A DNA stretch of 42,768 nucleotides from the NCBI GenBank assembly GCA_002104905.1, contig MCFE01000713.1, positions 1 through 42,768 of the forward strand. The letters run 5' to 3'. The translations under genes and the position numbers were made by a program. This document shows, one piece after another, positions 26,512 through 31,884 of the stretch. This DNA is from Basidiobolus meristosporus CBS 931.73. Its lineage: Eukaryota; Fungi; Basidiobolomycota. The notes below the pieces were generated by a model. It was not told where the DNA came from. It did not search any database and worked only from the letters and a program-made list of their open reading frames with translations. Position 1 is the first letter of the stretch; each line of letters opens with the position of its first letter.

Positions 26512-27297
26512 ATGGAAAACTGGTCGATGTCACAAAGGGTGCACTACCCATTAGCACTTTTATGGAATATTGTTCTTCTTTCCACCACTTTCCTGTTTGT
26601 TGCCCAATACCTATCTCCAGCAATACGCTACCGTAGCATCACTCTCACTGTGCTTATGGCCATCGGGAACTCGTTGGTCACCACACTCTATCTCGGCCGA
26701 GAGCCGACCTACAACACCTTCCCTTGCTTCCTCAATATCTGGGTCTCATCGATCGGGACGCCGCTGTGGCTTACCTCAGTCGCAGGGCGATTCGTGCGGC
26801 TTGCCTTTCTGTATCATTTCAGCCAAGCGAAGCTGGTCGCTGGCTCAAAGGGAGCCCAGTACATACACGTTGGCCCAGAGAAGTCCAATCTTAGCCTTGA
26901 GCAGTATGCCGAGTCGATGGTAGAGGATCCGCAGCAGTTCGAGGTGTTCAAGCGGTTCTCGCAGCGCGACTTCAGTGTGGAGAATGTCCTGTTCTTCGAA
27001 CGGATCCAGAAGTTCCGTCACCACACCTCGGACATCATCGGCGAGGGAACACTACCCACCTGGGTGATCCTGGAGATCAATAGTATCTACAGTATATTCT
27101 TTGCAGCTGACTCTGAGTTCGTATTAAACCTGGAGGCGCTGACGGTGAGAGAGATTCGGCATCGATTCCAAACCGGAGGGATCTGCCCGGACATATTTAA
27201 CAGGGCCCTCAATGAGATTCGTACGCTGATATTTCGGTACACATACGCTAGATACGTCAGGCTGGGTCAACAAGGTCTCGCCAAAACCGTACTCTAG
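26512..27297 (+). CDS. Internally deleted 7TM-RGS paralog 2 (261 aa): TM1-3 fused in frame to RGS
   Basis: Aligns with paralog 1 aa 1-133 and 309-436, with a 525-bp in-frame deletion at 26910/26911. ORF intact, RGS motifs intact. Could also be a recent pseudogene. Confidence 0.8.
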   Translation: MENWSMSQRVHYPLALLWNIVLLSTTFLFVAQYLSPAIRYRSITLTVLMAIGNSLVTTLYLGREPTYNTFPCFLNIWVSSIGTPLWLTSVAGRFVRLAFLYHFSQAKLVAGSKGAQYIHVGPEKSNLSLEQYAESMVEDPQQFEVFKRFSQRDFSVENVLFFERIQKFRHHTSDIIGEGTLPTWVILEINSIYSIFFAADSEFVLNLEALTVREIRHRFQTGGICPDIFNRALNEIRTLIFRYTYARYVRLGQQGLAKTVL

Positions 27298-27651: not shown

Positions 27652-29025
27652 TCAAAGTTTGTGGATGGATTTGCCATCAACAAACACCTGGGCGATATTA
27701 CGATCATCACCGTTGTTGATGAACTTCTCAAAGATAGTGTTGAGCTTGTCATGGTCAAACAGATCGATGGGTGATCCGCGAGTGCTGGGATTAACGATCA
27801 GAGCGTCAAATTGCTTGCCCACAACAAAGTTACCAAGCTTCTCCTTCATCCCGAGTACGTCGGCTCCACCGAGTGTAGCGATGTAGAAGATCTCGGGCAA
27901 CTTCAAGTACTTATCATCTGGATGCTCAAAGCTACGGGCAATCCCAGCGAAGTAGGCGTTACGGATGCTGTTGAGGATGGATGTTGAGTAGCCACCGGAA
28001 ACGTCAGTCCCAAGGCTGAGCTTTTGTCCATCTGTTAGCATCTGGCGAATTTTGGCTATCCCGCTGCGGAGACTCAAGTTGGAGTTGGGACAGTGGGAGA
28101 TGCCCGCCCCCCGTTGCTTGAGCAGTTTCTGTTCCGCATCGGTTGGGTAAACCACATGGGCCATGATGGTGCGGTTGGTTAGCAGCCCATGGGCATCATA
28201 AACCGATGTATAGTCGGGCTGATCAGGGTGAAGCTCTTTGACCCAAGCGATTTCGTCCAGGTTCTCATCCAGATGAGATTGGATAGGGAGATTATATTTG
28301 CTGGCCAATGCGGCAAGACCTTTCATCAATTCAGAGGTGCAGGAGGGTACAAATCGGGGAGTGATAATTGGAGTGACTCGGGAGTTTTTCTTGCCAAGGA
28401 CGTACTGAATAAAAGCCTCGGAGTCTTTCAAGCTTTTCTCGGTGGTCTCGATGTAGTAGTCTGGGGAATTCCTGTCCATGTTTACCTTCCCGACAAATGC
28501 ACGCTGGCCCCTACGCTCTACGATGTCGGAGAGGATTTTGCTTGCTTCAAGATGGATTGTGGCATAATAACTAGCCGCTGTGGTGCCGCCCCGGATGAGT
28601 CGGTCAACAACTTTCCCATATGCCTCCTTGGCGTAGCTGGTGTCGTTGAACCGAGCCTCACGAGGAAAAGTATATGTATTTAGCCAGTTGAGTAGCTGCA
28701 AGTCCATCCCAGATCCGGTGAATACGTACTGTGGAGCATGGATGTGTGTGTCGATTAAGCCTGGCATGATGAATTGTTGGTTGCCTAGACGAGTAACACT
28801 AGCTCTGTATTTTTCACGCATCTGATTGACTTGCTGCTCGGTCGCGTTTCTTTCCACTTGTATGATCTTTCCAGCGGTATCTACTACGATCACACCATTA
28901 CTTACATACTCGATGCTTGTAACGTCGGCGGAATGAACGAAGTTTCCGTAGAATATATCCCCAGCAGCAGCATTGGCGGAGGCTGCGAGTGCGGCAGAGA
29001 GCATGGCAAGAGTTAAGAAGCGCAT
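27652..29025 (-). CDS. GUD1: Guanine deaminase (amidohydrolase superfamily, 457 aa, intronless) with N-terminal signal peptide
   Basis: Motifs: PGLIDTHIHAPQY (HxH), YYATIH, GKVNMD, ITPRFVPSCT, IQSHLDEN, HCPNSN, LGTDVSGG. First ATG is 29025 (the track start at 29073 is a GTG), giving MRFLTLAMLSAALAASANA|AAGD. Confidence 0.93.
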   Translation of the reverse strand: MRFLTLAMLSAALAASANAAAGDIFYGNFVHSADVTSIEYVSNGVIVVDTAGKIIQVERNATEQQVNQMREKYRASVTRLGNQQFIMPGLIDTHIHAPQYVFTGSGMDLQLLNWLNTYTFPREARFNDTSYAKEAYGKVVDRLIRGGTTAASYYATIHLEASKILSDIVERRGQRAFVGKVNMDRNSPDYYIETTEKSLKDSEAFIQYVLGKKNSRVTPIITPRFVPSCTSELMKGLAALASKYNLPIQSHLDENLDEIAWVKELHPDQPDYTSVYDAHGLLTNRTIMAHVVYPTDAEQKLLKQRGAGISHCPNSNLSLRSGIAKIRQMLTDGQKLSLGTDVSGGYSTSILNSIRNAYFAGIARSFEHPDDKYLKLPEIFYIATLGGADVLGMKEKLGNFVVGKQFDALIVNPSTRGSPIDLFDHDKLNTIFEKFINNGDDRNIAQVFVDGKSIHKL

Positions 29026-29085
29026 TTTCGAGGTAGGATTGCTGAGAGAGCACCGAGAACACTTACTAGGCACTCAACTCCATGG

Positions 29086-29093
29086 TTTTTATA
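29086..29093 (-). promoter_or_regulatory. Putative TATA box of guanine deaminase
   Basis: TATAAAAA ~60 bp upstream of ATG 29025, supporting that start. Confidence 0.45.
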
Positions 29094-30600: not shown

Positions 30601-31884
30601 ATGGAGTGGACTGTGTCTCAGAAGATATATTACCCGTTGACAATTATCTGGAACGTAATCTTGGTTGTTTCTACTCTCCTGTTCATATCTCAACGACACT
30701 CGCCGTCAATCCGATACCGCAGCATCACGCTCTCAGTGTTGATGGTCATATCCAACTCACTGGTGACAACGCTTTATTTGGGCCGTGAGCCTGATGTCGA
30801 GAGCTTTCCGTGCTTTTTAAATCTATGGATATCTTCTATCGCAATCCCGCTGTGGCTGACTTCAGTAGCAGGGAGATTCATGCGATTGGCCTTTCTTTAT
30901 CACTTCAGCCAAGCTAAACTCATGGCCGGTACGGGTAGTGCGAGATATGTTGACAAGGCTACGTTGGAAAACGGCGCTATCTCCACATACTTGGTGCTAG
31001 ATGAGAATTGGTATGCACAGCATCGCGAGAAGTTTACTACCAAGTACATCGCGAAACTCATTGGCGCGTGTGTAGCGTTCCAAACTGTGTTGACTCTAAT
31101 TATTCAGGTGTTCACTATCAAGTTCCAGATTACACCCAAGATTGCCACTGGAGGATGCCTGGTTGGCTGGGAGTTTATTCCGGTGTGGCTAACTTCGGCC
31201 TTTTACGTATTTCTGTTGTGCCCCCTCTTCATCACCTGGATTCGTGGAGTAAACGATGCATATGGCATACGACGAGAGCTGATTGCAGATTTTACACTTG
31301 GTGTACTCGCCTTCCTGCTCTATATTATATTCGCATCGTTCCCACAAATGAAAAACATACGCCTGATTTTTCCTGCTGCCCACTGGAGTGTTGTGGCTCT
31401 GGTCTTTAGTCATATCTTCAGCATCGTAGCTCCCACTATCGAGGCATTAAAAGGGGGCCCTAAGACACGAAAGTCTACAAGTCTAGCCTCGTTTGATTCT
31501 ATGGTTGAGGATCCCCGGCAGTTTGAAGTATTCAAACGATTCACTTTGAGAGATTTCAGCGTTGAGAACGTTCTCTTCTATGAGAGAGTTATTCAGCTCA
31601 AATTGAAATACCAGGATCTTCCATATAACCCGAAAGGCTCGCTGAGCACTGAGGTGGTCTATGAGCTTACTAACATCTATAACACCTTCATCACGACTGG
31701 TTCCGAATTCGAACTCAACCTTGAAGCGGCTACCATCAGCAGACTCAAGGAACGCTTCCAGAAAGAGTTGCGGCTGGACGTTTTCGACCAGGCTTTAATG
31801 GAAGTACGAAACCTGATGTATAGATATACCTATCCTAGATTTGTGAAGCTTAGCCGAAAGAATCTTGAAGAAACCATGCTGTAA
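30601..31884 (+). CDS. 7TM-RGS receptor-like protein, paralog 3 (427 aa; alternative in-frame ATG at 30529)
   Basis: Colinear with paralog 1 along its whole length (MEWTVSQK ~ MDNWTLSQK; GGCLVGWEFIPV; FKRFTLRDFSVENVLFYE; YRYTYPRF). Confidence 0.92.
   Translation: MEWTVSQKIYYPLTIIWNVILVVSTLLFISQRHSPSIRYRSITLSVLMVISNSLVTTLYLGREPDVESFPCFLNLWISSIAIPLWLTSVAGRFMRLAFLYHFSQAKLMAGTGSARYVDKATLENGAISTYLVLDENWYAQHREKFTTKYIAKLIGACVAFQTVLTLIIQVFTIKFQITPKIATGGCLVGWEFIPVWLTSAFYVFLLCPLFITWIRGVNDAYGIRRELIADFTLGVLAFLLYIIFASFPQMKNIRLIFPAAHWSVVALVFSHIFSIVAPTIEALKGGPKTRKSTSLASFDSMVEDPRQFEVFKRFTLRDFSVENVLFYERVIQLKLKYQDLPYNPKGSLSTEVVYELTNIYNTFITTGSEFELNLEAATISRLKERFQKELRLDVFDQALMEVRNLMYRYTYPRFVKLSRKNLEETML

What the first reader, a model, noticed from the sequence alone, without database searches (positions are those of the whole stretch)
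27652..29025. Guanine deaminase with a signal peptide: apparent extracellular guanine catabolism
Seen: all catalytic motifs are intact. The first ATG gives a textbook signal peptide (MRF, hydrophobic core, A-N-A cleavage) directly ahead of the normal enzyme N-terminus, and there are four N-glycosylation sequons (NAT, NDT, NRT, NLS). Known: characterised guanine deaminases (yeast Gud1, E. coli GuaD, human GDA/cypin) are intracellular; guanine is very poorly soluble, is the main nitrogenous waste of arachnids, and forms crystals in amphibian, reptile and fish iridophores. Inference: a secreted enzyme that releases ammonium and xanthine from solid guanine, fitting a fungus associated with arthropods or herptiles. 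I know of no described secreted fungal guanine deaminase but cannot search. The C-terminal HKL is a weak PTS1-like tripeptide, so dual targeting is possible.
Basis: partly seen in the sequence, partly recalled or inferred. Interest (0 to 1): 0.82.

Follow-up and report, generated by a model that had tools for sequence, protein, structure and literature searches.

The report
Guanine deaminase carrying a secretion signal
A frog- and lizard-gut fungus (Basidiobolus) keeps ordinary cytosolic guanine deaminases plus a separate, conserved set of copies that start with a secretion signal, so it probably breaks down guanine outside the cell; I found no description of this, and it has not been tested at the bench.

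Summary
Window 27652-29025 (-) is an intronless 457-codon gene of Basidiobolus meristosporus CBS 931.73. It encodes a complete guanine deaminase (GDA): TIGR02967 scores 449 bits, human GDA matches at E 1e-124, and the AlphaFold model superposes at TM 0.92-0.94.

Residues 1-19 (MRFLTLAMLSAALAASANA) form a signal-peptide-like leader immediately before the first strand of the fold. The leader is not a quirk of one gene model:
- All Basidiobolus GDAs form one clade, which splits into a leaderless cytosolic-type group and a leader-bearing group (both 100/100 support).
- The leader is present at all six leader-clade loci seen in two species.
- It evolves as coding sequence (pS 0.69, pN 0.10 against the B. 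ranarum ortholog).
- The leader clade has replaced five cysteines kept by its cytosolic sisters, retaining only the two near-invariant ones.
- It gained a sequon (N127) absent from 64 other GDAs.

Among 267 relatives, only one amoebozoan protein has a comparable leader. I found no paper describing a secreted GDA.

Still untested: transcription start, cleavage, final destination (outside the cell, cell wall or vacuole) and substrate. The public gene model starts at Met8. The conserved C-terminal H-[KR]-[LI] resembles yeast Eci1's functional PTS1 (HRL).

The scan had already noted signal-peptide GDA copies on other contigs of this genome.

The parts
27655..29025 (-). Complete intronless coding sequence, 457 codons, of a guanine deaminase precursor. 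The stop codon is at 27652-27654.
   Evidence: Searches give the reading frame. Identity: TIGR02967 448.8 bits, 2uz9 E 1e-124, AF2 pLDDT 94.7, Foldseek TM 0.92/0.94 to human GDA.
28969..29025 (-). Predicted cleavable signal peptide, residues 1-19 (MRFLTLAMLSAALAASANA). The n-region is Met-Arg, the h-region is about 14 residues, and the c-region is A-N-A.
   Evidence: Sequence. In the model it is a lone helix with pLDDT 61-68, outside a fold that starts at residue 21. It is conserved in P0002, P0003 and P0004 and in the decayed copies L004 and L005. Against the B. ranarum ortholog the leader shows pS 0.69 and pN 0.097.
27655..28968 (-). Mature enzyme, residues 20-457: a beta-sandwich plus (beta/alpha)8 amidohydrolase barrel.
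29002..29004 (-). Met8, the start chosen by the public (JGI/NCBI) 450-aa gene model. It would remove half of the leader.
   Evidence: P0001 starts MLSAALAAS. The B. ranarum ortholog has Leu (CTT) at this codon, so Met8 is not a conserved start.
29086..29093 (-). TATAAAAA box 68 nt upstream of Met1, conserved in the B. ranarum ortholog.
   Evidence: Its use as a promoter element is inferred.
29066..29083 (-). Five-codon upstream ORF (MELSA*). Its ATG lies 3 nt after the TATA box, so it probably sits upstream of the transcription start.
   Evidence: The CATGG is conserved in B. ranarum. The inference that it is not transcribed is untested.
28738..28746 (-). H94-I-H96, the first two zinc ligands (HxH motif). 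Q99 follows at 28729-28731.
   Evidence: Columns invariant across 68 GDAs; coordinates checked.
28264..28275 (-). H251-L-D-E254: a zinc ligand and the catalytic glutamate. D253 replaces the Cys found in the cytosolic sister clade.
28003..28005 (-). D341, the zinc-binding and catalytic aspartate (GTD motif).
28639..28647 (-). NDT sequon at N127. It is specific to the leader-bearing clade.
   Evidence: Present in 4/4 of the leader clade, 0/3 of the cytosolic Basidiobolus clade and 0/61 other GDAs.
28840..28848 (-). NAT sequon at N60, in a loop between strand 53-58 and helix 63-73.
   Evidence: Present in 4/4 of the leader clade, 1/3 of the cytosolic clade and 5/61 others. Secondary structure.
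28168..28176 (-). NRT sequon at N284.
   Evidence: Present in 4/4 of the leader clade, 0/3 of the cytosolic clade and 9/61 others.
28072..28080 (-). NLS sequon at N316, next to the active-site H311-C312. It is ancestral to the family and so says nothing about secretion.
   Evidence: Present in 32/61 other GDAs.
27655..27663 (-). C-terminal H-K-L, a PTS1-like tripeptide. The clade conserves it as H-[KR]-[LI].
   Evidence: -HRL is the PTS1 of yeast Eci1.

Best explanation
The gene encodes a catalytically competent zinc guanine deaminase (guanine + H2O -> xanthine + NH3) made as a precursor with a cleavable N-terminal signal peptide (residues 1-19).

It belongs to a Basidiobolus-specific paralog clade. 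That clade arose by duplication of the ordinary fungal cytosolic GDA, acquired the leader before B. meristosporus and B. ranarum diverged, and was then duplicated further.

Proposed mechanism:
1. Translation starts at Met1 and the leader directs co-translational entry into the ER, where it is cut after A-N-A.
2. The enzyme folds in an oxidising lumen. Loss of every non-essential cysteine would fit that environment, and N127 and perhaps N60 and N284 may be glycosylated.
3. With no ER-retrieval motif, transmembrane segment or GPI tail, the enzyme leaves by the default route to the cell wall, periplasmic space or medium.
4. There it deaminates external guanine, releasing ammonium and the more tractable xanthine for uptake.

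What is shown: enzyme identity, the leader and its conservation, the duplication history, cysteine loss and purifying selection.

What is inferred: use of Met1, cleavage, glycosylation, the extracellular end-point, and guanine from prey, excreta or nucleic acid as the natural substrate.
For: Enzyme identity:
- TIGR02967 scores 448.8 bits against a cutoff of 375.4, and human GDA matches at E 1e-124.
- All 46 invariant family columns are kept, including the zinc ligands, catalytic Glu/Asp and the guanine-binding Q99 and R224-F225.
- The AF2 model has pLDDT 94.7 and superposes on human and yeast GDA at TM 0.92-0.94 and rmsd 1.4-1.5 A.

Leader:
- Residues 1-20 form a separate helix of lower confidence, and the fold starts at residue 21.
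- The same kind of leader occurs in P0002 (MRFLSLALLSAALVASADA), P0003 and its inverted twin (MYLTSLAIISATLIGSISA), and P0004 (MHLYSLALISAALIGNISA). It is also encoded upstream of both frameshifted copies.

Phylogeny:
- Basidiobolus GDAs are monophyletic (100/97).
- The leader clade and the leaderless clade each have 100/100 support.
- Each species has members of both leader subclades, so the leader predates the species split.

Start codon:
- Met1 is the most upstream in-frame ATG.
- The ortholog has Leu at codon 8.
- Codons 1-24 show pS 0.69 against pN 0.097.
- TATAAAAA and the AAAATG context are conserved.

Selection: over the whole gene pS is 0.76-0.82 (saturated) against pN 0.06-0.14.

Compartment signatures:
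- The leader clade has 2 Cys per protein, against 7-8 in the sister clade and a median of 8 (minimum 3) in 100 other eukaryotic GDAs.
- The five lost Cys sit in columns where all three cytosolic Basidiobolus paralogs keep Cys and 28-66% of other GDAs also have Cys.
- The N127 sequon is unique to the clade.
- Mature pI is 6.7-7.4, against 5.3-5.6 in the cytosolic paralogs.

Cytosolic function is covered by the leaderless paralogs P0007 and P0008 in the same genome.
Against: - No transcript evidence: no RNA run was listed, so the 5' end of the mRNA is unknown.
- The public annotation starts at Met8, which would leave a marginal leader.
- No formal signal-peptide predictor was available. The call rests on classical n/h/c and -3/-1 criteria and on conservation.
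- Total sequon number is within the family's normal range, and the cytosolic P0009 has six.
- The conserved C-terminal H-[KR]-[LI] resembles a working yeast PTS1. A purely secreted protein does not explain it.
- A signal peptide shows ER entry, not the final compartment.
- The flanking genes are RGS-domain genes, a sulfotransferase and a MatE transporter. Nothing nearby links the gene to purine uptake.
- Xanthine, the product, is itself poorly soluble (my own knowledge).
Confidence: 0.62

Rival explanations
1. The leader takes the enzyme into the secretory pathway, but the destination is internal: the vacuole or another endomembrane lumen. There it would deaminate guanine released by vacuolar RNA and nucleotide turnover, rather than working outside the cell.
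For: Everything that supports ER entry applies equally here: the leader, cysteine loss and the new sequon. Many fungal vacuolar hydrolases also start with signal peptides (my own knowledge).
Against: There is no propeptide between the predicted cleavage site and the first strand of the fold; only 2-5 residues separate them, so there is no obvious room for a vacuolar sorting determinant. There is also no ER-retrieval motif. The absence of a known sorting signal is weak evidence.
Confidence: 0.15
2. The leader is not used, or not always. Translation or transcription starts downstream (Met8, as in the public model), giving a cytosolic enzyme, or a peroxisomal one through the C-terminal HKL. Alternatively, two isoforms are made from one gene, as with yeast invertase SUC2.
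For: The public gene model P0001 starts at Met8. H-[KR]-[LI] is conserved at the C-terminus of the clade. -HRL is the PTS1 of yeast Eci1 and is seen bound in the Pex5 cavity. Urate oxidation, a later step of purine breakdown, is peroxisomal in many eukaryotes (my own knowledge).
Against: Met8 is Leu in the B. ranarum ortholog and absent from the other paralogs, so no conserved downstream start exists before the fold. Codons 1-7 change mostly synonymously, and the leader as a whole is under purifying selection. His at position -3 is outside the canonical [SAC] of PTS1. A nascent signal peptide would normally engage SRP before the C-terminus is even made (established knowledge). Five parallel cysteine replacements are not expected for a protein that stays in the cytosol.
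Confidence: 0.13
3. After duplication the leader-bearing enzyme changed substrate, for example to a guanine analogue, pterin or other aminated heterocycle met outside the cell. It would then no longer be primarily a guanine deaminase.
For: Relaxed or new selection after duplication is common. The stem branch of the clade is long (0.47 substitutions per site). Amidohydrolase relatives act on 8-oxoguanine, isocytosine and triazines.
Against: The protein scores above the trusted cutoff of the guanine deaminase equivalog model. It keeps every invariant family column, including the purine-contacting Q99 and R224-F225. The nearest structures by a wide margin are true GDAs.
Confidence: 0.07

Closest known systems
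Eukaryotic amidohydrolase-type guanine deaminases (human GDA/cypin, PDB 2uz9; S. cerevisiae Gud1, PDB 6oh9)
   Same: Same family, fold and active site. Identity to human GDA is 46%, with TM 0.92-0.94. All zinc, catalytic and guanine-binding residues are kept.
   Different: Those enzymes have no hydrophobic leader and are described as intracellular (my own knowledge). This protein has a 19-residue signal-peptide-like leader, only 2 cysteines against a family median of 8, a near-neutral pI, and a short C-terminus ending in HKL.
Leaderless Basidiobolus paralogs (P0007 and P0008 in B. meristosporus, P0009 in B. ranarum)
   Same: Sister clade from a lineage-specific duplication. They are also intronless and lie in the same genome, at 55-57% identity.
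   Different: They have polar N-termini (MLQTPADFAANQ..., MNSSTTSRLFFG...), 7-8 cysteines, no N127 sequon, acidic pI, and C-termini without H-[KR]-[LI].
Secreted adenosine deaminases of the ADGF/ADA2 (CECR1) family
   Same: A functional analogy only: a purine deaminase that carries a signal peptide and acts on extracellular purine (my own knowledge, not tested here).
   Different: A different family and substrate, in animals rather than fungi. In ADA2, secretion is an ancestral trait of the family. Here it looks like a recent gain on a normally cytosolic enzyme.
Yeast periplasmic scavenging enzymes such as invertase Suc2 (secreted and cytosolic forms from one gene)
   Same: A nutrient-releasing enzyme sent out by a short cleavable leader. 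The Met1/Met8 arrangement in this one gene resembles the two-start logic of SUC2 (my own knowledge).
   Different: Met8 is not conserved in orthologs or paralogs. Basidiobolus instead covers the cytosolic role with separate genes.
Planoprotostelium fungivorum guanine deaminase P0073
   Same: The only other protein among 267 relatives with a comparable hydrophobic leader before the first strand (MIRQLRQALCLLFLVRFLAG...).
   Different: It is an amoebozoan protein, phylogenetically far from the Basidiobolus clade, so any leader there is an independent event. It is a single sequence and its gene model was not checked.

Membership tests
Guanine deaminase, amidohydrolase superfamily (EC 3.5.4.3; TIGR02967) | Whole-protein score above the curated cutoff of the equivalog model | tested here: met
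   448.8 bits against a cutoff of 375.4, covering profile positions 2-401 of 401.
Guanine deaminase, amidohydrolase superfamily (EC 3.5.4.3; TIGR02967) | Zinc ligands HxH, a third His and Asp, plus the catalytic HxxE glutamate | tested here: met
   H94, H96, H251, E254, H290 and D341 are all in invariant columns of a 68-sequence alignment. Coordinates were verified.
Guanine deaminase, amidohydrolase superfamily (EC 3.5.4.3; TIGR02967) | Guanine-contacting Gln after HxH and the Arg-Phe of the PRF motif | tested here: met
   Q99 and R224 are invariant and F225 is nearly invariant. They align with the corresponding human GDA residues.
Guanine deaminase, amidohydrolase superfamily (EC 3.5.4.3; TIGR02967) | Beta-sandwich plus (beta/alpha)8 barrel fold superposable on solved GDAs | tested here: met
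   AF2 pLDDT 94.7, pTM 0.92. Foldseek gives 2uz9 TM 0.92/0.94 at rmsd 1.5 and 6oh9 TM 0.93/0.94.
Guanine deaminase, amidohydrolase superfamily (EC 3.5.4.3; TIGR02967) | Measured deamination of guanine to xanthine | not testable with these tools
   Needs an enzyme assay.
Sec-type secretory proteins (cleavable N-terminal signal peptide) | Tripartite leader: short n-region, uncharged hydrophobic h-region of about 7-15 residues, polar c-region | tested here: met
   The leader is M-R, then FLTLAMLSAALAAS, then ANA. There is no charge in residues 3-22, and the best 10-residue Kyte-Doolittle window is about 2.1 (sequence). Paralog leaders have h-regions of 15-17 residues.
Sec-type secretory proteins (cleavable N-terminal signal peptide) | Small uncharged residues at -1 and -3 of a cleavage site placed before the folded domain | tested here: met
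   The site is A17-N18-A19|A20, and the fold starts at residue 21. Paralogs have A-D-A| and I-S-A|Q.
Sec-type secretory proteins (cleavable N-terminal signal peptide) | Positive call by a trained predictor (SignalP, DeepLoc) | not testable with these tools
Sec-type secretory proteins (cleavable N-terminal signal peptide) | No retention or anchoring signal (K/HDEL, further TM segment, GPI tail), if the protein is to be released | tested here: met
   The C-terminus is ...VDGKSIHKL, with no [KH]DEL and no hydrophobic tail. The rest of the chain is a globular GDA fold at pLDDT above 90.
Sec-type secretory proteins (cleavable N-terminal signal peptide) | Leader present in the mRNA and protein found outside the cell | not testable with these tools
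   No RNA run was listed. No Basidiobolus secretome proteomics naming this enzyme was found.
PTS1 peroxisomal matrix proteins | C-terminal tripeptide matching [SAC]-[KRH]-[LM] or a documented variant | tested here: inconclusive
   HKL here, and HRL or HRI in relatives. His at -3 is non-canonical, but -HRL is the PTS1 of yeast Eci1.
PTS1 peroxisomal matrix proteins | No competing N-terminal ER signal | tested here: not met
   A conserved signal-peptide-like leader is present.

The most novel reading that the evidence does not exclude
Basidiobolus has evolved a small family of truly extracellular guanine deaminases: three intact genes plus decayed copies in B. meristosporus, and two in B. ranarum. 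With them it mines the almost insoluble guanine in arthropod prey and excreta and in digested nucleic acids in herptile guts and dung, releasing ammonium and xanthine outside the hypha. This would be a first extracellular step of purine catabolism, which I found described for no fungus. It is possibly coupled to purine permeases noted elsewhere in this genome (unchecked lead).
Probability: 0.35. Interest if true: 0.75.

Novelty: new variant of a known kind. Interest (0 to 1): 0.55.

Why it matters
Guanine deaminase is treated as an intracellular salvage and catabolic enzyme. A conserved, selected secretion leader on a lineage-specific paralog family would move the first step of guanine breakdown outside the cell. 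That would give a concrete, testable link between a gene-family innovation and the unusual niche of Basidiobolus, which lives in the guts and dung of insect- and spider-eating amphibians and reptiles.

It is also a clean natural example of how a cytosolic enzyme is refitted for the secretory pathway: gain of a leader, purging of free cysteines, new sequons and a pI shift.

Practically, a cysteine-poor, secretion-competent GDA could be useful as an enzyme reagent.

It also flags a likely start-codon error in the public gene model (Met8 instead of Met1), which would hide this protein from secretome predictions.

Tried and rejected
- RNA evidence. The look-up of sequencing runs listed no run, so read laying could not be used and the 5' end stays unknown.
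- Literature. Searches for 'extracellular guanine deaminase', for guanine deaminase with secreted, signal peptide or secretome, and for Basidiobolus with secretome or guanine found no description of a secreted GDA. The zygomycete secretome paper does not mention it in the main text, and its supplements are not held. The paper on 19 Basidiobolus genomes has nothing on it.
- Retrogene origin of the leader clade. Rejected as uninformative, because the cytosolic paralogs are intronless too.
- Horizontal transfer. Rejected, because the clade nests inside fungal GDAs as sister to the other Basidiobolus copies.
- Upstream exon or 5' intron removing the leader. There is no in-frame ATG upstream. The GTAAGT...CAG stretch in the 5' region spans only about 25 nt, too short for an intron (inference).
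- Mitochondrial presequence. Rejected, since there is one Arg here and none in P0003 or P0004, and no amphipathic basic pattern.
- PTS2. The N-terminus does not fit the nonapeptide consensus (by eye).
- Signal anchor. The h-region of about 14-17 residues is too short for a membrane span and is followed by a good cleavage site.
- Purine-metabolism gene cluster around the gene. Not seen; the neighbours are RGS genes, a sulfotransferase and MatE.
- The bacterial promoter and terminator scan is irrelevant for a fungal gene and gave background-level hits.
- Sequon count as evidence. It is largely discounted because it falls within the family range.
Full report
**What is there**

The minus-strand reading frame from ATG 29025 to stop 27654-27652 is uninterrupted and encodes 457 residues. 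The window is contig MCFE01000713.1 of Basidiobolus meristosporus CBS 931.73.

The protein is a guanine deaminase (GDA) of the amidohydrolase superfamily by every test available:
- Pfam Amidohydro_1 matches at 6e-63.
- The NCBIfam equivalog TIGR02967 scores 448.8 bits against a cutoff of 375.4.
- Human GDA (2uz9) matches at E 1e-124 and yeast Gud1 (6oh9) at 3e-98.
- An AlphaFold2 model has pLDDT 94.7 and superposes on human and yeast GDA at TM 0.92-0.94 and rmsd 1.4-1.5 A.
- In a 68-sequence alignment the zinc ligands and catalytic residues (H94, H96, H251, E254, H290, D341) and the purine-contacting Q99 and R224-F225 fall in invariant or nearly invariant columns.

That covers the intact motifs, the leader MRF...ANA, the four sequons NAT60, NDT127, NRT284 and NLS316, and the C-terminal HKL.

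**The leader**

Residues 1-19 (MRFLTLAMLSAALAASANA) have the classical layout of a signal peptide. There is one basic residue, about 14 uncharged hydrophobic residues, and Ala at -3 and -1. They are followed within two to five residues by the first beta-strand of the GDA fold (DIFYGNFVHS). In the model, residues 2-17 are a detached helix of lower confidence (pLDDT 61-68), and the confident fold begins at residue 21. The segment is too short for a membrane span, lacks the basic amphipathic character of a mitochondrial presequence, and does not fit PTS2.

**The leader is not an accident of this one gene**

The closest relatives are all from Basidiobolus. Four intact proteins share the leader design while differing in sequence:
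- P0002 (B. ranarum, 88% identical): MRFLSLALLSAALVASADA.
- P0003 and its inverted neighbour on contig MCFE01000692.1: MYLTSLAIISATLIGSISA.
- P0004 (B. ranarum): MHLYSLALISAALIGNISA.

Two further B. meristosporus loci are annotated as truncated proteins (P0005, P0006). Both carry the same kind of leader (MYFSSLALISTALISAISAQNV, MYLSSLAFISTALISAISAQNVFYGSFVHS) just upstream, separated from the rest by a frameshift. They are either decaying copies or assembly errors.

By contrast, P0007 and P0008 (B. meristosporus) and P0009 (B. ranarum) start with short polar sequences, like GDAs of other fungi and animals.

A maximum-likelihood tree gives:
- All Basidiobolus GDAs in one clade (100/97) inside the fungal GDAs.
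- A split into a leaderless clade and a leader clade, each with 100/100 support.
- A further split of the leader clade into two subclades, each with members from both species.

So the leader was gained once, after a lineage-specific duplication and before the two species separated, and it has been kept in every descendant.

I also screened 267 relatives: 120 word-search hits plus the best 150 representatives of an exhaustive scan of 1.84 billion proteins. Only the Basidiobolus clade has a clean leader directly before strand 1. One amoebozoan protein (P0073, Planoprotostelium) looks similar, and two or three others have long N-terminal extensions of a different kind.

**Which start codon?**

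The public model (P0001, 450 aa) begins at Met8, which would halve the hydrophobic core. Four observations favour Met1:
- It is the most upstream in-frame ATG.
- The B. ranarum ortholog has Leu at codon 8, and no paralog has a Met there.
- Between the two orthologs, codons 1-7 differ by four synonymous changes and one conservative Thr/Ser change. Over the first 24 codons pS is 0.69 against pN 0.097. This is the signature of translated, constrained sequence, not of a 5' UTR.
- A TATAAAAA box 68 nt upstream and the AAAATG context are conserved between the species.

The only upstream ATG lies 3 nt after the TATA box and opens a five-codon ORF. I could not obtain RNA evidence, because no run was listed. 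This remains the main gap.

**Signatures of a change of compartment**

Cysteines:
- Every leader-clade protein has exactly two cysteines. The sister clade has 7-8, and 100 other eukaryotic GDAs of similar length have a median of 8 and a minimum of 3.
- The two that remain (C229, C312) are nearly invariant and invariant, respectively, in the family.
- The five that were lost (now S152, S162, D253, V291, A324) are Cys in all three leaderless Basidiobolus paralogs and in 28-66% of other GDAs.
- Purging free cysteines is what one expects of an enzyme moved into an oxidising compartment.

Sequons:
- N127 is present in 4/4 leader-clade proteins and in none of 64 others.
- N60 and N284 are present in 4/4 and rare elsewhere.
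- A fourth sequon (N34) occurs in three relatives but not in this gene.
- I give sequons little weight overall. The total number (4-6) is within the family range, the cytosolic P0009 has six, and NLS316 is ancestral and sits beside the active site.

The mature pI shifts from 5.3-5.6 in the cytosolic paralogs to 6.7-7.4.

The genes are under strong purifying selection. Synonymous sites are saturated (pS 0.76-0.82) while pN is 0.06-0.14.

**How it most likely works**

1. The precursor is translated from Met1. The leader takes it into the ER and is removed after Ala19.
2. The zinc enzyme folds there, probably gaining N-glycans at N127 and possibly at N60 and N284.
3. It has no K/HDEL motif, no second hydrophobic segment, no GPI tail and no room for a sorting propeptide. 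It would therefore follow the default route to the cell surface or medium.
4. There it would convert external guanine to xanthine and ammonium.

The same genome keeps leaderless paralogs for the cytosolic role.

The ecological reading fits the genus. Guanine could come from arthropod prey, arachnid and mite excreta, or digested nucleic acids in herptile gut and dung. Basidiobolus is described as an insect-dispersed herptile gut fungus (PMC9391592), and guanine is excreted in mite faeces (PMC10927894). This reading is inference only.

**Rivals**

- A vacuolar or other lumenal end-point cannot be excluded from sequence.
It is conserved as H-[KR]-[LI] across the clade, and -HRL is the working PTS1 of yeast Eci1, seen in the Pex5 cavity by cryo-EM (bioRxiv 10.1101/2024.06.02.597006).
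- A leaderless isoform from Met8 could in principle go to peroxisomes. However, Met8 exists only in this gene, and an N-terminal signal peptide normally wins because it acts co-translationally.
- A shift of substrate is possible after duplication, but it is not suggested by any active-site change.

**Surroundings**

The gene lies tail-to-tail with a small RGS-domain gene (26656-27297, +) and 1.6 kb from another RGS gene (30601-31884, +). Further out are a sulfotransferase, a MatE transporter and more RGS genes. Nothing nearby is purine-related, so I see no support in this window for a functional 'scavenging island' around the deaminase. The plus-strand ORFs overlapping the gene are antisense artefacts of a conserved coding region.

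**Comparison with what is known, and novelty**

The protein is a full member of the guanine deaminase family. What is unusual is its targeting. I found no paper in the searchable library describing a secreted or signal-peptide-bearing guanine deaminase in fungi or elsewhere. Among the nearest 267 relatives the trait is confined to Basidiobolus plus one amoebozoan candidate.

The nearest functional analogy is the secreted adenosine deaminase family ADGF/ADA2 in animals (my own knowledge). I class the finding as a new variant of a known kind. It is a solid comparative-genomic case for relocation of a housekeeping purine enzyme into the secretory pathway, but it awaits any experimental evidence.

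The scan had already flagged signal-peptide GDA copies on other contigs of this genome (s1-209774, s1-209858). It also flagged a permease-plus-deaminase locus (s1-197436) that I did not check.

Noticed in passing
L002:5659-9368 (B. meristosporus contig MCFE01000692.1): Two near-identical leader-bearing GDA genes lie head-to-head around a 974-bp spacer. They differ at dS 0.023 and by about three residues, so this is a recent inverted duplication. A TATATAAA box sits about 45 nt before the ATG of the right-hand copy.
   Followed up: partly
L004:3900-5254 and L005:3900-5046: The loci annotated as P0005 (383 aa) and P0006 (342 aa) encode an intact signal-peptide-like leader just upstream of the annotated start. 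A frameshift separates it from the enzyme body. P0005 also has internal deletions, and P0006 runs off the contig end. They are decaying paralogs or assembly errors.
   Followed up: partly
window 29002-29025 (-): The public gene model for this gene (450 aa) starts at Met8. Comparative evidence favours Met1, so the annotation is probably seven codons short. That would weaken any automated secretome prediction for this protein.
   Followed up: yes
L006:3001-5132 (B. meristosporus contig MCFE01000155.1): The leaderless GDA paralog P0007 lies tail-to-tail, 190 bp away, with a 160-aa CDA-fold deaminase gene (dCMP_cyt_deam_1 / MafB19-deam). Two unrelated nucleobase deaminase folds are adjacent.
   Followed up: no
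P0073 (Planoprotostelium fungivorum guanine deaminase): This is the only non-Basidiobolus relative with a signal-peptide-like N-terminus (MIRQLRQALCLLFLVRFLAG...). It may be an independent case in a phagotrophic amoeba, perhaps lysosomal or phagosomal.
   Followed up: no
window 26656-27297 (+), 30601-31884 (+) and further RGS genes in L003: At least three RGS-domain genes flank the deaminase within about 10 kb. This looks like a local RGS gene family expansion unrelated to purine metabolism.
   Followed up: no
window 29066-29083 (-): A five-codon upstream ORF (MELSA*) has its CATGG conserved in B. ranarum, immediately after the conserved TATA box. It probably lies upstream of the transcription start, but it could matter if transcription starts further upstream.
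   Followed up: partly
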